A DNA stretch of 64,000 nucleotides from Lepidodermella squamata. Taxonomy: Eukaryota > Animalia > Gastrotricha. A program made the translations under genes and the position numbers. Under the pieces are notes generated by a model. That model ran no database searches. It was not told the DNA's origin and saw only the letters and a program-made list of their open reading frames with translations. This document shows positions 35,327-53,242 of this stretch, piece by piece. Position 1 is the first letter of the stretch; every line of letters begins with the position of its first letter. Location of the stretch: contig JBLDXI010000002.1 in NCBI GenBank assembly GCA_047495785.1, forward strand, positions 2,418,001-2,482,000, read 5' to 3'.

Positions 35327-37904
35327 TCAAGGCAAAGGATTGTGAATGCCCCATGGGATGTGGTTGTCACGGTCCCAGCGACAAACCCTGCGGCCACAGC
35401 ATACAAGTGAAGGGTCCTTATTCACATTGTCGTAGTAAATGTCCCCACAGCATAGTTGGTAAGGATCGGGCCGGATTCTGAAAATCAACCGATAAATATT
35501 CATAAACTCTCGCAATCAATCCTTACCTAATCAATTGACCACCACAGCAGAAATGAACCTTGTCATCGAAGGGTTGGCCGTTGCAAAGTAAGGAATACTC
35601 GTAGCCGTAAGGGCTAGCGGGTAAGGGTCTTGCTTTCTCAACAGGCGGCCGTGACGGTTCGCCGTTGAATGTTGGAGCATCACGTGGTTGCAAATACTGG
35701 AAACGGTACGTAGCTGGTTGAGTCTCAACGCCGGCCGGGATGCTGATAGACGCACCCGGGATGCCTGGCCACGGGACACGGACTGATGCATTCGTTCGAC
35801 GCGCATCGCTGATTTGTTCGACGTTAGCCAGAACTGCGACTTGGCCGTTTGGTAGATGCGAAACCGGCCCAGTTGGTACTACGGCGCCGTAGTAGGCGTT
35901 CAAACGCGGCTGTTCGAACACCTTAACATTAGGATCTTCAACCTCGCGTTGTTGCTGTTGTTGTTGGTGGCGCAGGAAGCCGAATGGGAGAGCGTCGTTT
36001 TGAATGAACGATTCGCCGGCTGGTTGTAGCAGCTGGTGGTTGCTGGCATCTGCCCGTGGTACTAGGAACTTGTCACCCGTATTAGGATTTCGCTCCGCAT
36101 ATTGGCCGCGAGGGACCAAGACGTGGCCGTTCAAATGATGGCCGACCTGTCCCAACTTAGGGATTTCGGACTGAATTGTTAGCGGCAGTTGCGGGAAAGC
36201 GTCGTGCTGTTGCTGATGAATCTGAGGTTGTTTCACGTCCAATGATGGCCTGCCGTGTAAAGGCAGGAAAGAGCCGTGATTTCCCTGTTCATTCTTAGCC
36301 TGGTGATTATTGTCGCCAGCACCAGCTAGAAGTGATGGGTTTGCAAGGTTTTGCCAATATTTATGGGCCTGCGATTCGAAACTTTCAGTTGGCGGTAGAT
36401 ACAACAGAGACGGCTGGGGTAACGGGGCGCCATTCTTAAAAAAAAGAATCGAATTCATTAAGGATTTTTAGCAATTTAAGATTTCCTTACGAAGAAGACA
36501 ATGCCACTGCGACAGGTGTGAATCTTCGGCAAGAATAGAGCGGAGCCACAACACTGGCCATTTCGGTCGGAATTAGGGTAGTAGAGACCTCGGCAACAAA
36601 GACCGTCAAGCGCGCGATTTGAGTCATATGGAACGGTGCCACCACAGTACCGCGGTAGATTGATGTTATTCACAATTGTAACTGTTGCTGGTTGCAGTGG
36701 GATGATGTGATAGTCCTGGCAGCGGTAGTGATATATGTCGTACACATTCTTGCCACAGCAAGCCAAATTCGGATGAACCTGGATTTAAATACAAAAAAGT
36801 AGGATTAAGACTCTAAAATTGCGTGAAAAAAATAATAAAAAATTCCACCTTAAAATTAAAAAATTACGCATTTTTTCAACTAACATTTGCGTAGTAGACA
36901 TCGTCGCAACACAAGTATCGGCCGATTGAGTTGTTCGCGATGAAGACGTTACCGCAGCACGAGTCTTCAAGCGGGTTGTAAATGCGATCGCCGCAGTAGT
37001 CGAGCGGCTTCGGGCCGCCCTTGTCGATCGGGCGAACCGTGCAGTCCTTGTCGCAGGTTTGCGTCGCCGTGTTGTAGAACGAGTCGCAGCAGCACGCGTA
37101 GCTGGCCTTGTCTGGAACTGTGAAGAAGTTGCCGTTGCAGCATAGGGCCTGTGATGAGTTTTTAGGCAGAACGCTCGAGCCGCAGCAGTAGTCGGTCTGC
37201 GGGTTGTAGCCCTTGCCCTGGCAGAAGTCGGTCGGCACGAACGGCTGGAGGGGCGGGCGGCGCGGCACGACCTCGAGCGGCGGCGTGCACATATAGAAGC
37301 GCGTGTCGTAGGCGTTGATGCCGCAGCACGCGAGAACGCGCTCCGGATTAACAACCCAGCGCCCGTTGCAGCACAGCGAGTACTGGTCGGTTTTGTTGAC
37401 AACTTTCCGGTCGCCGTCGCCGCAGCAGCCGCAGCAGTACTGCGTGTTCGGGTCGTACATGTTCGCGCCGCAGTAGTAGTTGGTCGGCACTACGCGGTCG
37501 AGAACTTGCTGCCGAACATGCCCGAACGGCAACAGCCCGCCGGCATTTCCCGACAGCAAGAAAGTTTTCGAACTGAAAAAGCGAAATTAAACTCGAAATT
37601 AGACAAAAATCGTTAACTCACCCGTCGCAACCGAAAAGCCGCGTGTCGTAGAAGCCCGATTGGCAGCAGGCTTTGTGCAAGGAACCCGGTATGTTCGGGA
37701 AGTGGTAGCCGTTACAACACAAGTCGCTAGCATTCTGATGGAACGGAAATTTCCCGCAAAATGGCTGTGAGAAGCTAGGCAATGGCGCTAATAGTTGACC
37801 TAAAATAACGAAATGTTGTACAATTCAGAGTAAACAGCTGAAAATTTACCATGAACGACTGCGACGGCGAGGAGCAGGAGGACAGATATTTCTTTGTAAA
37901 TCAT
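35327..37904 (-). CDS. Secreted galaxin-like dicysteine-repeat protein with a Gln/Pro/His-rich linker
   Basis: Signal peptide MIYKEISVLLLLAVAVVHG (ATG 37904). Many CG..xY(N/D)P....CC(G/N) repeats across exons, a long low-complexity Cys-free block at ~35600-36430, then terminal CC repeats. TATA-like element ~37955. Confidence 0.8.
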
Positions 37905-41100: not shown

Positions 41101-44100
41101 CTTCCTTAATAAAAAACGCTTCAACCACCTAGTGCGAATAAAAAAGTTTCGATTAATAACAGCTTCTTTAGGGCAACATGGCCGGTGCACTTCATCTGCA
41201 TATTTATCGCTAAGAGTAATTCAATAAGAATGTGGTCTCAAAAGCTTATGAGCTAAAATATTCAAAATAAATTAAGAAAAAATAGCAATAAATAATTTAT
41301 TATTATTACTGGCATGTAAAATGAATTGCTAAACAAAGAAAACCAGGAAAAAATAGGGAAAAAACGTAACAATTTTTATAAAATTGAATATACCAAAAGT
41401 TCATGCGATTTGAGTTTGGTAGAGCGTTAAAATCATTACTAATAGCGATGTCCTAATGTAGTAACGCTGGCGATCAAGTCGTGTTGCAATTTTTCTAACG
41501 AGTTTACTGCGCCAATTGAAAGGGCGAAACGGGCGTCGCGGCTGCTGAGGACAGTAGTAATAGGGGTCGAGCGGCGCCAAAGTGGTGTGTAATCTTCGAG
41601 TGTGTTCAGATGTGATTTATATCGCTACAGCTGGGCGCAATCGTTATTATTATTACTACCGCCGAGCGTCAAAATATTCCCTGTTATAAGTAAATAGCAG
41701 AACAAATGATCACTGCGCGTTTATGGACTGCTTTATATATATAAGGACGCGCAGTGTCCGCGCTGCTCTCTCCTCATCCGTCATCTATCGCCATCGTCCG
41801 ATCGCGTTTCCAATGAAATATTTCAATTTCGATAATAATAATAATAATAATAACAAGGCATTTAAAGATGACTGCTGTCCAGCGCGCGCTGTCGCGGTTA
41901 TTATTACGCGCAGCGCCTTGGCGGCAGGATCGCGCGCGAGACCAAGCGCAGGGGCCAGGGCGCAGAAACAAATTGGCCACTTTGCTGCAGTGTAAGGCAT
42001 AAACACGCGCGCAATAACAACAACAATAAAAGACAAAGGAGGATAAGCGTTTGCGAATTTATTACACGCAATAGCGCTATTAATATGAAGCAGAATGTCA
42101 AGATTTTGCTGCCGCCACTGCCGCCGCCGCCGCCGCCTTTCAATTCGATACACATTTGTAGCAATTTGGCTAGTACGCGCCATCGATTTTTCTTAGAGCC
42201 AGGCCTAGCGCCTGAGCGTGTGACGGCTTGTCTGGCTGGCCGCTAGTTACATGTCTCTTGACTCTTTCATGACTAGTTATTTCGGCCATTCATTCACTCG
42301 ACGCGCTCATTCAATCAGCCGGGCGCGTGCGGGTCGCGAACTCGCAAATGACAGTAGCCAGGCATTCGCTGCTTCACAGGGATTTGATTTCTTGACGTTT
42401 CGTCCACAGCCGCGTTGGCATCTTCGGAAGCGTTAGTCAAGCTGTTATAGCCGATCGTAATTATTTTACTAGATTACTATAAATAAATAAAATAGTCTAC
42501 CCTTTTAGTAATCGTTAATATTAGGACGCGCACAATATTTGCTCGGCCTAAAGTTTTGATCGTACTTATTCGGCCGATAAACATTCGACCACCTTATTTT
42601 TCGTCTCGGTTCACTGGAAAAATAACGTAATAAGAAACGAGCTTTATTTCGGACGCAACATTCATTTTGAGTGATTGCCGTTTTTGAAATAAAATATTCG
42701 AAAATTAGGTTGATTGCTGCGACGTAGTTCCGTGATCCATATAAAACCAATAAAATCCAACACCACCAAGGAGAATTAGACCAACAACAATGAAAGTCAC
42801 CGATATCTGAAATGATAATTACAGACAATGGAAATAATTATTTACGTTTTTTCTCACCAGTATATCTGTTGTTCTGTCGCCAGTTTCACCCATGTTCAAT
42901 AGCTATCGATTATAGCAGAGTTGAAAAAGCGGTCATATAAGCTAGGTAAGTGGTCTGCTGGCTCGAAGTAATGACTAACAGAGGACAAATAAATTATATG
43001 AAATCCGTGTAGTAAAACTATGAAACCAGAAACAAAACACAGCGCTGGGATTCACCATCCGCGGATATTGGCTTTGTTCTAGCTATATATATGGCTTCAT
43101 CAATCTTTTTATAATAATACATGCCAATTGTCAAAACAATGACTGCTGCTCATTACTAATGGTCCGCTGGAGCAAAAGCCATTATTTTTTTAGAATACAA
43201 AGTCAAGTTTTTGATTGGAATCGCCGCAAATTGGAAATGACCCAGTAAAACAATGGCACTGCTTGGAACAATTATTCCTTTGAAAAAATGCAACGCGGTA
43301 TAGCCAAAAAAATTGGAACAAAATGACGAAATGTCAAACTGACCTTCATTTTATACAAGACGACAAAAACAGCACTTGTCAAAAGTTTACAACTTTATTA
43401 TCGTCATTTACATCAAATTAGAATCGAGTATTTTTTCCGAGGTGTCAGCATTTGATGGATTCACAACAAGTATTTGTAACGAAAAAAAAATAGAATAAAA
43501 CCCAGATACCAAAACTAAATAAGATTCTGCATCAATGGCGAAGAAGGTGAAGCAGCAGCATCATCGATGGCACGATCTCCAAATTATTTTATACACATGC
43601 TGTGACGATACTGCGATTTCAAGTATGGCTTTGAGATAAAAGCTACAGCGTCGAATGAGCAAAAAACACGGCGAATAGATATTGCGACTGCAGCGTTATA
43701 CAAATACAAGGGCGGTGATTCGGTCGATTGTGCTGTTAAGTTTGTCCCGAGTTGACATAGAAGGCTAGATATAGGGTCAAGCAAGCCGCCGCCAGGGTGA
43801 ACATTGCTGCGAAGAGGGCCAAGAACGAGCCGGTAATATTGTAGCAATTACTATAACCCTTTGATGTATCCGCGGCCATTTTGCCGAAAAGTCAAACAGT
43901 CTCACAAATAAAACCTAAAAAAAAATACAAAAAATTATAATTTAGTAACCAAATTTTTTATTAATATAAAGATAATATATAACAAGCAGGCAGGTTACCG
44001 CGCCCCGCTTCGAGTGCCAGCGAATTGTTGTGTATTGCTCGGTAATAGCTCGACATTATTGTCCCTGTTGTTGAGCGGGGTGGAAAGAGTGCAGCGTATT

Positions 44101-45272
44101 TGCAGACCTTTACACAATAGGGATTACCAATAGGGGCGGACAAATACGGCCTAATTCGAGGTCACGTCATGCTACCGGGGTGCGGTAACGATGCCGAATC
44201 TTGATACTGCGGCTGCTGTCAAGAGATAATGAACATTGAGCACACACTTGTTGCGATTGAAGTATGCATCCGATAATGTTGGGATTATACAGAGTATTTC
44301 GAATAAGTTGCGTCCGCGTTGCCTTAGGTTTGCCCTGAATTCACGTAGAAGGCTAGGTAGACGGCCACCCCGGCGGCTATGATAACGGCAAGAGCTGCGA
44401 TCAGCGCCAGGAAGGAGGCAGCGATCGTGTAGCCGTTTGCAATGGTTGTCGCTGCCATGTTTTCTCACGTTACTTGCAACGTGTTTCAATCAATTACAGA
44501 AGAAACACACAATCCTAATGCAAGCAATAGGAAATCTTACAAACATCGCAGCAAATTTTGTGAAAGTTTTTGACCACCTGTGGATGCCATGCAATATTAT
44601 TATTTTAGCGTGGAAATTTCTTTGTGCGAAGCCCGCGGAGCGTGCGCGCTTCTGGCCACCGTTCTTTGCAACAACTTTGCAACAGTGTTTTCAAACTCTT
44701 TTTAAGCAACGCGCGTCGCCTGCTGTCGAGCTTCTTTTTTCTGCTGCGTGACACTCGCAGTTGTAAACAATGCCGAATATAATAGCTGGCGAAGATCCGG
44801 CTCGGTTGACCGCAGCAAGCCGACACAATCAAGCGTCAATTACTGTTGCAATGCGCTGCTATACATACTCTTGGAAAATATAATGAGCGCGTAAACAAAC
44901 AGCTCTGTAACGAAATTTTTCCAACGGCTTTGCAAAAACACAACATGATGGATATGATGGCTGAAACGTGCTACTGAGCTTTACTCGCGCTGGCCTCATC
45001 GTTTCACTGACAATTTTTCTCAATAGTAACCGCGCGTCTCGCCGACAACGGCCTCATCGTACAGTTTTATTCGACCTTTTTCAAAGCCAACTTATTCTAA
45101 AATAGGTCATTTTCGCCTGTCATTTTTTGTTGACAAACTAGAGGCTGCTCTGTCCCTTGTGAAATAAGGCTTAAAGCACTCAGGCAATAATGACCTCCTC
45201 TAACCCAAATAGGAAAAGAAGTGTTTATTTCTAACAATTTTCCCGAACAATTATTCAGGCTATTTTATTAGT

Positions 45273-45923
45273 TCAACTGACTAAAATTCCAGCTTCGATT
45301 TGGCCGTAGAGTCTAGCCCCTTCACTGCGCTCAGTTTTTGTCACAGAGGCATCGTCTAACATTTTCAGTTTCGGAAATTTCGAAGCCACGTAACACCTAT
45401 TTTTTTTCATAAAATTAAGAATTTAAATTTAAGGAGGCATTATTATTTACCTGTAGTCGTGAATTTCGAATGTTGTCGAAGCCATTGTAGGGCCGTTGTT
45501 TTGAGGGAATCGGTCGAAACCTTCCCCATAGGTCAAACCGGGAGTTCCAGGGTTCATCATCAAGCTTAGCCAAGTTAGGTTAGGTAGGCTAACACACAAT
45601 CGATCGACAAAGAAGGCTGTTAGATATTTCGCAGAAATAAGAAATTAATTATTAAGGCGGCCTTTTTACTTACTTAAATTGTCAATTTTATTGTTATTCA
45701 ACCATAATAACCGAAGCTCGGGCGAGTAGGGGAAGACCACGTGTGAAGTAATCGCATTTCTATCTAGCACTAGGGAGGTTAGCTTGGGGAAGTCACGGAG
45801 AAAGGCCACGTCCGAAAATTCATTCCCAGTCAAGTCCAACTCAGCGATGCCATCGGCTCCCCGAACAACCCAATCCGGCAAGGCTGCTAGTCCCTGCCCG
45901 GTAAGATTGACCTTCTTGCTCAT
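45273..45923 (-). CDS. LRMDA (C10orf11)-like small LRR protein, 3 exons
   Basis: LTSLVLDRNAI...LRLLWLNNNKIDNL, then LSLMMNPG, then YRCYVASKFPKLKMLDDASVTKTERSEG (LRRcap-like); stop at 45273. Confidence 0.75.
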
Positions 45924-46058: not shown

Positions 46059-46298
46059 TCAAACAAGCTTCTCCCCGGCACGTGACCTCAATTGATAGCC
46101 GGCGTAGTCAGCGGTGGTAGTGGTAAGGCCAGTTCGGTCCTTACTTTTATCGTCAGCGTAGTCAAGTTGAATTTCGTTCTTTTGATCGACAGTCGAGCCA
46201 ACGTAGTAGAAAATAGCAGCTCCGATGAATAGAACAGTCGCGACTATGAACATTACGCCGATGAGAGCATGGCACTGTTGCACAGTTAGGAAACTCAT
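46059..46298 (-). CDS. 79-aa single-pass membrane protein of unknown function
   Basis: MSFLTVQQCHALIGVMFIVATVLFIGAAIFYYVG followed by a polar tail; TATA-like element ~46320; AATAAA at 46028-46023. Confidence 0.6.
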   Translation of the reverse strand: MSFLTVQQCHALIGVMFIVATVLFIGAAIFYYVGSTVDQKNEIQLDYADDKSKDRTGLTTTTADYAGYQLRSRAGEKLV

Positions 46299-46686
46299 AA
46301 TGTGTAGTTGGTTTGATATTATAAAAATGTAAGAAATACTGCGTTGCGAACACGATATTCTTGAGCGCAGAAAATTGCCACTGCGTGCGACCGCGGTCGA
46401 GCTGTTTTCTTGCTTTGTTTTTGTCGTGACCGGGCTATTGTATTCGCAACGCAAACGCGCGGCAAACAATAGCCTTCAAAAAATTGGCGCAAGTTTCAGC
46501 GCGTAAATATCCAACTTCAATGGGGTAACAGAGAAGAACTTAACAATGATTCCATTTTTGTTTAAGTACCTAAGGTCCAAAATTTTTGTAAGAAATCAGA
46601 GTGAAGGCTTAGTAATTACGTATTTTTCGACGTATTTTAGAATTTTTTATACCTAAATTGGGCGATTTGTTAGACCGGCAAATCGA

Positions 46687-46821
46687 ATGGGAACAAGCAA
46701 CATCAACACTTACACAATCGTTATAGCGATTCTCGGCTTCATCGCCGCCGTATTGGGCATCATTAGCTGCATGTTCTTCCTCTACAACGCCTACTACACC
46801 CAGGCTGCTCTGACCAACTAA
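46687..46821 (+). CDS. 44-aa single-TM microprotein, copy A
   Basis: MGTSNINTYTIVIAILGFIAAVLGIISCMFFLYNAYYTQAALTN*; paralogous to copies B and C with many third-position differences; AATAAA at 47021. Confidence 0.88.
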   Translation: MGTSNINTYTIVIAILGFIAAVLGIISCMFFLYNAYYTQAALTN

Positions 46822-47373
46822 AACGGCGGGAAGCATGCATCGCTTGGCTCAACTGCTCATCTATCGTCATACGATTATTCGGATCTCCGTTATAATTGCC
46901 ACTTGTAAATTGCCTGCATGAGTTATATTAATATCCACCTTAATATCTCAACACTTTATTTTGCATGCTCAATCGATTATACTCGCATGATTTTACTGTC
47001 GGAAATTGCGCTATTATTTTAATAAATTTCTTGCCTTTGGAATATAATTGCATCGCTCCTATCTTCGAAATCGGTGAAAGGCATGTATCGCTGTTCTGCA
47101 TGTAAAATTGAATTTTTTATTAAGAGGTCGAATGACAGAAATGTCTACTTTTGCATGATATCTTCACTTGGCCTGCGCAGTTTCGATGTTCCAGTTGCGA
47201 CTTAAGTGCACGCTTAAAAACTAAATTAAGGTGGATAAGGCGCTGACTACATTTTTGTCTATAAACGGCCACCTTAATTGTTCATGATATCCGAATCTAT
47301 CTCATTCCACTGTTTTGAGAAATTCTTTCTAGTTGGCTCTGTAATAGGTGTTTCAATAATACGCTGATATATT

Positions 47374-47508
47374 ATGGGAACAAACAATATTAATACCTAT
47401 ACTATCGTCATTGCTATTCTTGGATTCCTCAGTGCGATCCTGACCCTCATCAGCTGCATGTTCTTCTTGTACAACGCCTACTACGTCCAGGCCAACCTGA
47501 CGAACTGA
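47374..47508 (+). CDS. 44-aa single-TM microprotein, copy B
   Basis: MGTNNINTYTIVIAILGFLSAILTLISCMFFLYNAYYVQANLTN*; TATAAA at 47260. Confidence 0.88.
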   Translation: MGTNNINTYTIVIAILGFLSAILTLISCMFFLYNAYYVQANLTN

Positions 47509-47725
47509 CGGACATCACCTGCGCAACGACAACGTGTAAAATCAAAAACGAATATGCAGCTAATATAAAAAAAATGACGCAATCTTCTGTTTTTTTTCTG
47601 TGCAAATATTAATATGAAACTCACCTTGAAATTTTTGCTCAAATGAACACGTTTTTTTATTGATGATTTCTACTTTTTTTTTAGGTGGATTGATTTATTT
47701 GATTTATTATCTCATTTGAGCTATA

Positions 47726-47910
47726 ATGGGAACAAATAACGTCAACACTTTCACAATTGTTGTCGCTATTGCTGGATTTATCGGTAAGTCATTCCGGTTT
47801 TGCTGTAATTTTTGTCTCTATCATTTTTTTTAGGCGCTGTCATCACTATGATCAGCAGTATGTTCTTCCTCTACAACGCCTACTACACTCAAGCCGGCCT
47901 AACCAACTAG
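47726..47910 (+). CDS. 44-aa single-TM microprotein, copy C (exons 47726-47783 and 47834-47910)
   Basis: Removing the 50-nt GTAAGT...TTTTTTTTAG intron (47784-47833) gives MGTNNVNTFTIVVAIAGFIGAVITMISSMFFLYNAYYTQAGLTN*, gap-free against A and B; AATAAA at 48044. Confidence 0.88.
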
Positions 47911-48651
47911 TGACATTGGAGCTGGGCTCTAATGATCGAACTTGCCTAAAAGTTGCCAAATACTCGCCATTATACAACTGATGAGAATATTGAAGAAAGC
48001 CAATCATTATTTTCTTCATCATCTTGCTCAACACATTTTGCCAAATAAATTACGAAAAAAAAATATCAACAATTCGCGTCGTCTTTACTTTCAATTTTTC
48101 TTTTCGTTTCTCAAAGAACAATAGGTTTGGTCAGCAAGATGAGTCTTGATGCTTGTTATAACACAAAGAAGAGGAGACAAAATCATCACTGTCGCATCAA
48201 CAATTTTACAAAATGCTGTGAATGAAATATAGCAGTAGAATGTCACATTAGGAAAAAATGCTATTCCAAATAAATTGCACTGAAATTTTTGATAAAAAAT
48301 AATAAAATATAATATGACCTTCATCGCCGATATACCGTGTTTGAGGGTGATGATGATGATGATGAACAATAATTTTCTCGAATAATATAATCCATCAAAA
48401 CAGCAAGCGTGAAATGAGAGTAGTATAGTTGAAAAATAATAAAATCTTTAGTAGTTTCACAGCCGAATTCACAGTAGTATAATGTCCGAACATCAGCGAA
48501 AAATAGTATAATCTGTCGCCCGGGAATATTCATCATAATATATATATATATATATATATTAATAAACAGCTGCGTATACACTTGCAATCGTGTGAGCAGT
48601 TCATCAACAATGAGTCTAGAAAACAAGATAGAGAAGTGAGTTGAGATTCAT

Positions 48652-51600
48652 TCACGAGCGTAGGTGCGTGCGAGAGGCCGACGGGAAAACGATGCCGCCA
48701 CTCGAGCCGTTGTTGTTGTTGTTATCAGGCGTCGACGGGTTCGGCTGGACTCGAGGCGTCATCAGGTCAATCGGCTGGTTATTAGCCGGCGGCGAGCTGA
48801 GATTCGCGGAGATCGCAGCGCGCGATTGCGTGAATTGCTGCTGCAAACGGCCTAGCAGGGCCGGGATCATTACCGAATGCGGTAGAAGCCCGGGTGATGA
48901 GGCCGGTTTCGGCGCGGCTTGCTGCGATTGTTGCGCCTGTTGCTTCAAATTGAAAAATATCGAAGTTAGACGCGGGTCTGAAATCGAGTCCGACGTTGAC
49001 AGGAATTGACTGAAGGGATCACTGGCAACGTTCGACGCCGGCGGTGGGGTGGCTTTTGGGGCGGGAGATGGGCTGCTGTCCTGGCCGGACCCAACGCCTG
49101 AGTTGCGCATCAACCAACAGAATAAATTGGGCGACTCGCGGAAATGCGACAGGTGGGCGTGGAGCTGGGCAATCCGCGCCTCGGCGAGTTCAGGTGTTGG
49201 AAAACTTCGTCGAGCGAATAATTCTAGCGCTCGTTGGTACTCGGCGGCGACCGCGGCAACTCGCGCCGGCTCGGTCAGGCCGCGTTGTTCCGTGTTGAAG
49301 AACAACATACCACACATAATAGCGAATTCTGTGATAGTCATCCTCGCGGTTTTTACAGTACCCGGGGCTGTTGCGCCCCGCGCCGACGCTCCGGTCAGGT
49401 ACTTGATAATGACTTCACGCATGAGCGGCGACGCCTGTGGCAGTTGCAGGCGCTGCGCCTCAACCGGGTCAAGGGACATTTGCGCGAAGAAGAGCGGGAA
49501 CGCGGCGTCGACGAACAGCAAATTGCGGTCGGCGAAGTGGATGTGTGAGTGGCCGAACAGCGATCGGACGTACTGCAGCAGCTGGTTGGCGTTGTCTTCG
49601 AAGTGGCGCATCAGCGTCGACCACACCTGGTCGATGGTCATGCCGGGCGAGATGATGTTGCGGCCTTGCTGCGATAGCGCCTCCAGCACCTTGACGCTGC
49701 GAACGGCCTGCGATGCCAGCCACTCGCCGCGAGCTGCCGCTACGAAGTTCGAGACAGGCCCGTCCGGCTGGGCGCCGGCTAACCCCGCCGCTGGCCAGTT
49801 GTACGGCGAAGATGCGAGCATGAGCGACGCGTCATTCGCCGGCGCCGATTGCCCGCCAGACGCCGCGGCTGGGTTCTGCAACTCAGCGGTCAGCGCTAGG
49901 CCGGTCAGGTTGAATCGAGCTCGAGCGCAGTCGAACAGCCATGCTAGATTTGCCAGCCTAATACAATAGAAAATAGGGTAATTTTCAGGTCTTTCACATT
50001 GTAATCATAATAATTTTAGAGAATCATGTGGTTCATGATGCTTGTTTTTTCAATTTGTTCAGCAGGGCAGACGTTGATTTAAAATGACACGAAAGTCCGA
50101 ATTTGTCGTAAAACAGCTCATTAAGGGGCATACATTGTATTTGTAACAAATTATATGATTAGCCCAGTTATCTATGTCCTAGGTCTTTCAGAAATTAATG
50201 GAATTGGAACTGCCACTACGAATCAAAATCAATCAAGGATATGACCCAATATTACCGCTGAGGCGTGAATCAACGTCATATCAGATATACGGGGTGAAAC
50301 TAATTGTCTCAATTGCTACTCCAAGGTCAACCAGAAAATTACGCATTAAATTTTGCGTAATACATATTTTACGTTATGGACAGATCATGCACTCGAAAGA
50401 TGAGCGCATTTCGTAAAACTATCGTCCTTGCACCTCGAGATCAATTTTTTAGAAAGAAACACGAGCTATTCTAGATCCATGAAAAGAGGATTCAATGAAG
50501 CTTTTCGCCAGGTATTAATCGGATTTTCGGATATTCAATTGAACCCAAAAGGGTACCAAACCTTGTTTGTTGGAAAATCAGCGAAAATAAAAAAGCAACC
50601 TTAATTTTTTTAGTATATTTTTTCAGAAAACTTACGAAGGTGAAGGAGCCGGCGTTGCGATTGATGCGGCATTAGTCGGCGACTGAGCCGAGGCCCGAGC
50701 AAAGCTTTCAGTTATCAGCGAGCTGAACGGCAATGATGCAGTCGGTTTAGGCGACTGGTCTGCCTGCTCGGCGTGTTGTCTGCTCGCGGCGATGGCTGAG
50801 CGCAGGCTCGCGAACACTGACTCCTGGACGCTGCTGGCGAAGTTTTGCGGCGGTGGTTCGAGATCAGCGCGAGGCGACGGCTCCGGCGGCGCCATCTGAG
50901 CGCCGGAACTCGCTTGCTTGAGCATAGCCATAGCCATCAGCATGCGATTTGCCACTGCCATTTTTGCATCAGAGCTTCCACAGTCTGTCGACGCTGGCCT
51001 ATCAGCGGTAGATGGCCGCTTGTCGGGCGGCGGGGGCGAGTCGTCATGCTGCGCAACAACTTCGCCGCCGAATCCGCCGAGCGGGCGCTTTCGGAATGGT
51101 AGGCAACTGCCATCAACGGGCGAAATCGAAGGGCTGTCGCTGTTGTTCGAAACGGCGCTGACGGATTGTTTGAGATTGACCGGCTGCTGGCCTGGATAAG
51201 GTGAAGTCGACATGATGTCAATTTGGCAACAAAAGCCACGTGAAAAGCTATGTGGCCGCAGCAAAGCCGCAGCAGCTATTACTATAGGGGACCCGGTTAT
51301 ATTGTGAAAATGCAACTTATTTACGCTTCTGCTTCCATTGTTTTGCCGGCGCGGGTGCTTTTCAAATTAAACGAGGCGCTTTTTGCCTACACGCGCTCAA
51401 AAAAATGTGTGTTGTATAAAGCGAAGCCAGGGTCGTGAGATGAACGCATACACATGCCGCGATGCAAGACTAAATTGCCTCGTCGCGCGCGTCCTCGAAA
51501 CAAACTTTTTTTTTACCTGAAACAGTGGCGCTATCCAGTTCATTGGCCGTCGCTCGGTTGCCGTGATGATTCATCGCGGCGATAAATGACTGCGGGACAT

Positions 51601-53242
51601 TGTTGGGCCGTTGTTGCACGGCTGCCATGAGGCGCCACAGCTCGGCCGGCGAGTAATTGCCAGGTGATGACGTAGTCTGTTGTTGCGGGTTAAAAGCGTG
51701 GCAGTTGATCATCGACTCAGCAGCGGTTTTTTGGCGAAGTTGCGCCAACTCGAGTTCGGACGGTTTCGCCTCGTGTATAGCGACAAAAGCGCTGTTAGGC
51801 GTGACGCAGGGCGCCGAATTTCGGTGGTTCTGCGCCTTCGCCACGGGTGATGACGATGAGGGTAGGCTGGGCCCGGGCGAGTCGCCTTGCGCGCCAGCTT
51901 TCGGCTTTTGACGCCGGCGGAAACGGAGGAGAGGCGCGGCGAGTAGCCGGTTTTCAGCGCGTAGTTGCTCGACATGGCGATGCGTTTGAATGCGGCGCAA
52001 ATATGAATGGCGCCCGGTTTTGCCGCCCTCCGTCGTCATGCCCATCTCCTGGCACAGGTCGAAGCGACATTTTTTGCACTTGCGACCCAGCGCCTGAATG
52101 CGGCACCGGATACCGGTCGATTGCGCGTTGAAACACGTATAGGTCTGCTCGAGGTTGTGAGTCATGGTACGGCGGAAAAATCCCTGAAAAAAAATTGCGT
52201 AAAATCCAATTTTCAGGATATAAATAGTAACATATTATTTTTATCATTCGCAAACAAAAAAAAATTAATTTTTCAGATCGTCCCCGACATTGATCGATAA
52301 ATCTTTATTGGTGTCAGAAATTAGGTCTTATCAATTTTTTTTGCCCTGATATGGAATCGACACATTGGAACCCGTCTTAATACAGGCTGATCCTTTACAA
52401 AAACTCAAGACAAAAAATGTCCTTAGTTTATTATACGAGGCAAAGCATGCCATTGAAATTTGAGGATCAGCTGTAAAGCCACGTTCTACGCCTCCGCAGG
52501 TATTTTTTTCCTCAACTGACGAAATAGGGTAAAATTTTGAACCCGTAAAATGGATAAAGTGTTCCATGAAGGTAATAAAGAAGGACAATTTCGAGGCCAA
52601 ATACTGACACTAAAGATTAGCATCAATTTAATGAGTCTAGTGAGTGGGTCGGAAAAAAGTTTAAAAACTGAGATGACTCACTTTACATCCTTCGCAGCTG
52701 ATTACTCCGAAATGATAGCCACTAGATGATGCGCCGCAGATTTGACACGGAACGAGGCGTAGGTCGACGGACCATCTCACAGAGCCAGGGTTGCCACCAG
52801 CTGAACCCGGGCTGTGATGCGGGGACTGAGGGCTGAGCGCCTCGGGTTGTTCCAGTTTCAGTTCGGCCTTATCGAAGGACGGCCAGGCGTAGTCGTGACT
52901 TTCCGGGTCGATTTCCGCATCGCTGGCCACGCACAGGTGCGATTCTTCATCGTCCGAAGCAACGTCCGGGATTATTTCGGCCTCAGTCGAGGAGCAGGCT
53001 GCAGAGCCTGGGCGTACCAATAACGCCATTGGGGTTACATCCGTTTGGTCTGAAATTCTGTTTTCCTCGTTTTCAGGCAACGGGGAGGTGGTCGTCTGAT
53101 TTTCCTGCCCAACGTCAACTTGCGGCGGTATTGAGTTCAACATCGCTGCCATTTGATGTTTAGGCGACGGCGGCGAGTCAATGTGACCACTGATATTTGG
53201 GCTGTCTTCTAATGGCCATGAAGCGTTTTGTTCAACATTCAT
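48652..53242 (-). CDS. Divergent nuclear hormone receptor (NR1-type P-box), ~4 coding exons
   Basis: DBD CQICGASSSGYHFGVISCEGCK|GFFRR...C...C...CKKCRFDLCQEMGM...GRHS. The last exon (49957-48652) splices in frame and has degenerate LBD signatures (LQYVRSLFGH...DRNLL; MTITEFAIMCGMLFF..E.RGL). The acceptor near 51280 is uncertain. Confidence 0.82.

What the first reader, a model, noticed from the sequence alone, without database searches (positions are those of the whole stretch)
46687..47910. Hidden tandem triplet of 44-aa, completely uncharged transmembrane microproteins
Seen: three same-strand ORFs missed by the ORF track encode exactly 44 aa each and align without gaps (MGTxNxNTxTIVxAIxGFxxAxxxxISxMFFLYNAYYxQAxLTN). 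Many differences are synonymous (e.g. ACT-TAC-ACA-ATC-GTT vs ACC-TAT-ACT-ATC-GTC), the stop codons differ (TAA/TGA/TAG) at the same position, and the flanks are unalignable. None contains D, E, K, R or H. Each has a ~23-residue hydrophobic core with regularly spaced small residues and an invariant aromatic tail MFFLYNAYY. Inference: this is purifying selection on a real microprotein family, which could be a regulatory subunit of a channel or pump (by analogy to regulin-type peptides), an oligomerising proteolipid, or a structural hydrophobic peptide. I do not recognise the family.
Basis: partly seen in the sequence, partly recalled or inferred. Interest (0 to 1): 0.9.

Follow-up and report, generated by a model that had tools for sequence, protein, structure and literature searches.

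The report
Orphan membrane microprotein gene cluster, gastrotrich
A tiny freshwater animal, probably the gastrotrich Lepidodermella squamata, has five mini-genes for roughly 44-residue proteins that are each one membrane-spanning helix with a smooth packing face; they are transcribed, kept by selection and present in the same order in a related animal, but match no known family and their job is untested.

Summary
Real genes, with corrections. dN/dS is 0.11-0.18 (p<3e-5). Two more distant paralogues (D, F) lie 2-3 kb away on the minus strand. cDNA contigs cover A, B, D and most of F; D has a poly(A) tail. One unnamed metagenome relative keeps the same head-to-head layout with five members. Nothing else matched in Pfam, PDB, PHROGs, the Atlas or 1.84 billion proteins. 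'Completely uncharged' is not a family trait: six of ten members carry charges. What is conserved is no net-positive flank, Tyr33, and a heptad stripe of small residues (100 degrees, same phase in both subfamilies), the Small-X6-Small pattern linked to antiparallel helix packing. Best guess (0.4): self- or hetero-oligomerising, possibly dual-topology helix bundles; accessory subunit of a larger protein is close (0.35). Regulin motifs are absent. This scan already noted three similar orphan microprotein arrays elsewhere in this genome, so the kind is recurrent here. New family, known class, function untested.

The parts
46687..46821 (+). Copy A, 44-aa single-helix microprotein (A-type subfamily)
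   Evidence: ORF; dN/dS; cDNA contig 46662-47238; orthologue P0121 68-70% identical; one helix 8-43, pLDDT 82
47374..47508 (+). Copy B, 44 aa, TGA stop
   Evidence: ORF; dN/dS; cDNA contig 47313-47649
47726..47783 (+). Copy C exon 1 (19 codons + 1 nt)
   Evidence: two allelic SNPs here are both synonymous; no RNA contig laid here
47784..47833 (+). Inferred 50-nt GT-AG intron of copy C, phase 1
   Evidence: only cut that restores the 44-aa gap-free frame; four allelic SNPs inside it, GT and AG kept; splice not seen in RNA
47834..47910 (+). Copy C exon 2, TAG stop
   Evidence: cDNA contig covers only 47894-48030
44324..44458 (-). Paralogue D, 44 aa, uncharged (D/F-type subfamily)
   Evidence: segment-shuffle p<=0.002 against A, B, C; cDNA contig 44523-43941 with untemplated poly(A)
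43736..43879 (-). Paralogue F, 47 aa, one Asp and one Lys
   Evidence: D-F pS 0.70 vs pN 0.29; cDNA contig 43484-43868
43915..43962 (-). D/F junction: AATAAA, poly(A) site of D at 43941, then a strong unpaired acceptor-like T-run-AG 26 nt further and 35 nt before the F start
   Evidence: operon-like, trans-splicing not shown
47667..47684 (+). Strong acceptor-like T-run-AG 41 nt before the C start and 35 nt after the end of the B cDNA contig
   Evidence: score 13, reached by 1% of AT-rich background windows
45273..45923 (-). Syntenic neighbour: three-exon gene for a 180-aa leucine-rich-repeat protein, between the two subfamilies
   Evidence: Pfam LRR; both introns seen as RNA joints; exon 1 59% identical to the relative's gene at the same place
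46059..46298 (-). Syntenic neighbour E: 79-aa single-helix protein with a charged tail; not shown to be of this family
   Evidence: orthologue in the relative; no significant match to the family; almost no RNA

Best explanation
Five small genes in two head-to-head groups encode single-pass membrane microproteins. SHOWN: coding constraint, transcription of four copies and the 3' end of the fifth, conserved gene order in a second species, one long predicted helix with a 23-residue apolar core between aromatic belts (Tyr9; Tyr33, 36, 37), and a face of small residues at 13/14, 17, 20/21, 24, 27/28, 31, 35 kept in both subfamilies. INFERRED: the peptides are translated and inserted in a membrane; the smooth face packs against another helix along its whole length in the left-handed Small-X6-Small mode; because neither flank has a net positive charge in any of ten members they have no strong orientation signal and can sit either way up, so they pair with each other antiparallel, as homo-oligomers or as A-type plus D/F-type hetero-oligomers. 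Such bundles would act as small membrane scaffolds or shapers. They have no catalytic, metal-binding or pore-lining charged residue. The tissue and process are unknown.
For: dN/dS 0.11-0.18 among A, B, C; pS well above pN across species; cDNA coverage and poly(A); synteny in L005-L009; helix 8-43; side-chain volume periodicity peaks at 100 degrees, shuffle p=0.001, phase 249 vs 246 degrees in the two subfamilies; heptad register R2 0.67, p=0.003, period 4 not significant, no GxxxG, all ten have Small-X6-Small-X6-Small; Small-X6-Small is linked to tight left-handed antiparallel packing and can drive self-assembly of TM peptides (PMC12541321); flank net charge 0 or negative in all ten.
Against: No protein-level data. 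The same paper says the motif also gives monomers, parallel dimers and mixed trimers, and occurs at interfaces with other proteins. D/F-type members of the relative have an acidic C-flank (-1 to -6), which may fix their orientation. Only two species, so column statistics rest on few independent sequences. No multimer model could be run.
Confidence: 0.4

Rival explanations
1. Accessory or regulatory subunits that dock the smooth face into a groove of a larger membrane protein (pump, channel, transporter, respiratory or translocation complex), working like regulins, FXYD or KdpF without being related to them; paralogues give tissue-specific tuning.
For: Size and one-helix build match regulins (PMC8396278); a Tyr-rich C-terminal tail recalls the functional luminal tail of sarcolipin; in DWORF small residues form a smooth face for SERCA binding (PMC13368986); conservation of both the core and the tail across species.
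Against: No regulin, FXYD or other Pfam hit at E<=1; no Leu-x-x-Asn, LFxxF or FXYD motif; no basic cytosolic flank; no candidate partner in the conserved block (neighbours outside it differ between species).
Confidence: 0.35
2. Structural proteolipids of an extracellular or stored lipid layer, like lung surfactant protein SP-C; in a gastrotrich the membrane-like lamellar outer cuticle is a candidate site.
For: Extreme hydrophobicity, no positive-inside signal, several co-located copies, all expressed. The lamellar exocuticle is recalled from general knowledge; three paper searches found no text on it.
Against: No propeptide or secretion signal; SP-C has a poly-valine helix, a di-cysteine and basic residues (own knowledge), absent here; no localisation data.
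Confidence: 0.12
3. Precursors in which the helix is a signal or intramembrane-protease substrate and the short aromatic C-terminal tail is the released active peptide.
For: The tail is the most conserved part of the A-type group; small residues at 27/28 could be a cleavage site.
Against: No basic n-region; the helix is continuous through the tail; the core keeps an invariant five-residue block and a packing face that a disposable signal would not need; tails differ between subfamilies and in length.
Confidence: 0.08
4. Not protein-coding: a degenerate repeat, structured RNA or exons of a larger gene.
For: No protein evidence; C's intron is inferred.
Against: Third-position bias and dN/dS far below 1; start and stop kept at the same codon with three different stop codons; flanks unalignable; no Rfam hit; cDNA runs unspliced through the stops with no joints to other exons.
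Confidence: 0.03

Closest known systems
SERCA regulins (phospholamban, sarcolipin, sarcolamban, DWORF)
   Same: smORF-encoded single-helix membrane peptides; short polar flanks; Tyr-containing C-terminal tail as in sarcolipin; can oligomerise
   Different: No sequence match; no Leu-x-x-Asn inhibitory pair or GxxxG; no basic N-terminal flank; core is one third small residues in a heptad stripe
Small-X6-Small (Ala-coil) transmembrane packing motif, as in EmrE TM4, tetraspanins and designed one-pass dimers (PMC12541321)
   Same: Small residue every seventh position over three to four heptads, large apolar residues between, no period-4 signal
   Different: A motif, not a family; here it makes up nearly the whole protein and the small face is wide (three positions per heptad), which may allow more than one partner helix
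Surfactant protein SP-C and other free proteolipids (own knowledge)
   Same: Very small, very hydrophobic, almost all helix
   Different: No precursor, no di-cysteine, no poly-valine, no basic residues
Other orphan one-helix microprotein arrays noted in this genome (s1-384305, s1-430002, s1-368324)
   Same: Tandem mini-genes, one helix, selection, kept in a relative, no known family
   Different: Other loci; their sequences are not shown, a look-up by sequence was blank (not informative), so kinship is untested

Membership tests
SERCA regulins | Single transmembrane helix in a peptide under 70 aa | tested here: met
SERCA regulins | Sequence match to phospholamban or sarcolipin profiles or solved chains | tested here: not met
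   no such Pfam hit at E<=1; no PDB hit below E=1
SERCA regulins | Leu-x-x-Asn pair (PLN L31/N34, SLN L8/N11) or the DWORF Pro kink and GxxxG | tested here: not met
   absent in all ten members (motif positions)
SERCA regulins | Binds SERCA and alters its calcium affinity or rate | not testable with these tools
   needs reconstitution
FXYD / KCNE ion-transport subunits | FXYD motif or profile match | tested here: not met
SP-C-like proteolipid | Di-cysteine, poly-valine helix, large precursor | tested here: not met
   no CC in any member, 6-11 L/I/V in a 23-residue core, complete ORFs of 43-67 aa; SP-C features from own knowledge
Small-X6-Small helix-packing motif | Small residues in heptad register on one helix face | tested here: met
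Small-X6-Small helix-packing motif | Antiparallel left-handed helix pair actually formed | not testable with these tools
   single-chain folding only; needs multimer modelling or disulfide-exchange assay
Phage or viral small membrane proteins | Profile match or viral context | tested here: not met
   PHROGs best E 0.005, unnamed families; no locus in viral contigs; context is spliced animal genes
SL trans-spliced operon | Downstream gene's acceptor shortly after the upstream poly(A) site | tested here: inconclusive
   fits D-F (26 nt) and loosely B-C (35 nt); weak acceptor before B
SL trans-spliced operon | Leader sequence joined at that acceptor in RNA | not testable with these tools
   only assembled contigs were served and none covers the 5' ends of F or C

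The most novel reading that the evidence does not exclude
An animal family of dual-topology one-helix proteins: two co-located subfamilies with no orientation signal assemble antiparallel through a Small-X6-Small face into a membrane lattice or ring, possibly the protein component of a gastrotrich-specific lipid structure, and are one of several such microprotein arrays expanded in this phylum.
Probability: 0.12. Interest if true: 0.8.

Novelty: new variant of a known kind. Interest (0 to 1): 0.45.

Why it matters
Conserved membrane microproteins are a known blind spot of annotation, and this cluster is a clean new example in an almost unstudied phylum. The proteins are nearly a natural version of the minimal designed Small-X6-Small helices, so they are a ready test of whether natural one-helix proteins without a positive-inside signal insert both ways and pair antiparallel. 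With three similar arrays noted elsewhere in this genome, gastrotrichs may use many such peptides. Against that, the family is so far limited to two species and has no demonstrated function.

Tried and rejected
Homologue searches with no further result: word-index search with the window's four unspliced ORFs (none) and with nine members (only the relative's three); JGI metagenomes, two scans; viral contigs; Pfam, PHROGs, PDB (noise only); Atlas by features (best 0.79, unnamed) and by shape (generic helices, uninformative); Rfam. The 248-aa gene called at L005 339-1085 reads through two TGA codons and fuses unrelated frames: rejected as a gene-caller artefact; the 78-aa P0123 is the relative's second A-type copy with an upstream in-frame extension. 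Gene E as a sixth member: not supported. The tree splits A-type from D/F-type (100/99) but resolves nothing inside, so one-to-one orthology and the order of duplications are not claimed. Paper searches on gastrotrich cuticle and trans-splicing gave nothing usable. Contig depth was not used to rank genes. Spliced copy C: never sent joined to a shared search tool (exon 2 alone); I did join its exons inside local scripts for dN/dS, alignment, the tree and a local tblastn against the window and the fetched loci. The database search of the joined model was left out.

Full report
Observation. The window is animal DNA with short GT-AG introns and about 43% GC. Copies A (46687-46821) and B (47374-47508) are intact 44-codon ORFs. 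Copy C (47726-47910) is not: read straight it ends after 35 codons, and it matches the others without gaps only when a 50-nt phase-1 GT-AG intron (47784-47833) is removed. The three share 32-36 of 44 residues, lack D, E, K, R and H, end in TAA, TGA and TAG at the same codon, and differ mostly at third positions. Nei-Gojobori dN/dS is 0.11 (A-B), 0.18 (A-C) and 0.12 (B-C), Fisher p from 2e-7 to 3e-5. Their flanks do not align.

More members. A scan of the window found two further paralogues on the minus strand, D (44324-44458, 44 aa, uncharged) and F (43736-43879, 47 aa). They score above shuffles that keep the helix position (p<=0.002) and the two subfamily profiles align over 39 columns without gaps (probability 78%, E 2e-5). 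Between the groups lie a three-exon leucine-rich-repeat gene and a 79-aa one-helix gene E that is not demonstrably related.

Expression. Run X1 behaves as a SMART cDNA library: it carries SMART primer ends and both introns of the LRR gene as joints. Its contigs cover A (from 46662, nothing upstream), B (to 47649), D (44523 to 43941, with untemplated poly(A) about 20 nt after AATAAA) and F (43868-43484). For C only 47894-48030 is covered, so the intron is not confirmed by RNA; indirect support is that a second allele has two substitutions in exon 1, both synonymous, and four in the intron. No joint links any copy to another exon. Coverage is unbroken from A to B, which fits one RNA or overlapping UTRs; contigs cannot decide, and eleven ATGs between A and B mean B would need its own 5' end. 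F and C each have a strong unpaired acceptor-like site 35-41 nt before the start and 26-35 nt after the end of the upstream RNA (score 13, 1% of background). This is operon-like. Earlier notes report a spliced-leader RNA and similar gene pairs in this genome; I could not test leader addition.

Organism. The scan has covered 1993 windows on 147 pieces, about 123 Mb; the published Lepidodermella squamata assembly is 122 Mb, 157 contigs, 43% GC (PMC11660948), and holders are a 2015 cDNA run and a 2024 run. No named animal exceeds 70% on the window's stomatin fragment. The gastrotrich assignment is thus probable but indirect.

Relatives. An exhaustive HMM search of 1.84 billion proteins returned two hits, P0121 (E 1e-13) and P0122 (E 1e-4), both from one unnamed animal in ENA metagenomes. 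Its contigs keep the layout: three D/F-type genes on the minus strand, the LRR gene, E, then two A-type genes on the plus strand. Synonymous sites are near saturation (pS 0.5-0.8) while A is 68-70% identical to its counterpart; pS exceeds pN significantly in most cross-species pairs. The LRR exon is 59% identical, so the A-type peptide is at least as conserved as its ordinary neighbour. Beyond the block the right-hand neighbours differ (aspartic protease there, nuclear-receptor-like gene here). All other searches were blank or noise.

What is conserved. Across ten members only Met1 and Tyr33 are invariant; F and all five members of the relative carry charged residues. So 'completely uncharged' is a local trait. 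Three things hold throughout. First, a 23-residue apolar core between aromatic belts, predicted as one helix (residues 8-43, mean pLDDT 82). Second, no flank with a net positive charge. Third, a face of small residues at 13/14, 17, 20/21, 24, 27/28, 31 and 35: side-chain volume oscillates at 100 degrees (p=0.001) with the same phase in both subfamilies, heptad register explains 67% of the variance (p=0.003), period 4 does not, and no member has GxxxG. This is the Small-X6-Small pattern, which is linked to tight left-handed antiparallel packing and can drive self-assembly of one-pass peptides, though it also gives other geometries (PMC12541321).

Mechanism. The anatomy says 'helix that packs on another helix' and little else: there is no catalytic, metal-binding or intramembrane charged residue. 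I put 0.4 on family members pairing with each other, antiparallel and possibly in both orientations, with the two head-to-head subfamilies as possible partners; 0.35 on docking into a larger membrane protein as an accessory subunit; 0.12 on a structural proteolipid of a lipid layer such as the lamellar cuticle (recalled, not found in the paper library); 0.08 on a cleaved tail peptide; 0.03 on non-coding. Coding, transcription, synteny and the small face are shown; translation, insertion, topology, partners and function are inferred.

Comparison and verdict. It resembles regulins in size and build (PMC8396278, PMC13368986) but fails their sequence tests, so it is not filed as one; that does not exclude a regulin-like role. 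It is an undescribed family within the known class of smORF-encoded single-pass membrane microproteins, distinctive for a full-length Small-X6-Small face with no positive-inside signal. The scan has noted three other orphan one-helix arrays in this genome; I could not test kinship. Interest 0.45: solid and testable, but limited to two species, recurrent in this genome, and without a demonstrated function.

Method note. The joined model of copy C was used only inside local scripts on session data; it was not sent to any shared database, where only unspliced ORFs and exon 2 were searched.

Noticed in passing
window 46059-46298 (-): Gene E: 79-aa one-helix protein with a charged tail, no Pfam family, orthologue at the same place in the relative (47% over the first 34 aa); a separate orphan microprotein with almost no RNA in X1.
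   Followed up: partly
window 45273-45923 (-): 180-aa LRR protein, three exons, both introns seen in RNA; five allelic SNPs in exon 1 all synonymous. Its pattern recalls LRMDA/C10orf11 (from memory, not tested). It starts 136 nt after E's stop, operon-like.
   Followed up: partly
   Followed up: partly
window 45938: A cDNA contig has eight non-genomic letters joined just before an AG, 15 nt upstream of the LRR start; could be the end of a spliced leader or of the template-switch oligo.
   Followed up: no
window 43862: A DNA contig of X2 matches a short stretch of F's N-terminal coding part and runs on into unrelated sequence: chance match or a further remote paralogue elsewhere in the genome.
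   Followed up: no
L005 437-640 (-): One D/F-type member of the relative has a 20-residue acidic C-terminal extension, showing the tail length is free to change in this subfamily.
   Followed up: partly
window 1000-21700 (-): At least three tandem copies of a multi-exon gene with several C-type-lectin-like modules, an EGF/CUB-like part and a kringle-like module (read from ORF translations).
   Followed up: no
window 35523-37559 (-): Cysteine-rich protein with repeated CC motifs, galaxin-like in pattern, followed by a Gln/Pro-rich part.
   Followed up: no
window 48652-53242 (-): Nuclear-receptor-like gene: C4 zinc finger hit but the putative ligand-binding exon has no Pfam match.
   Followed up: partly
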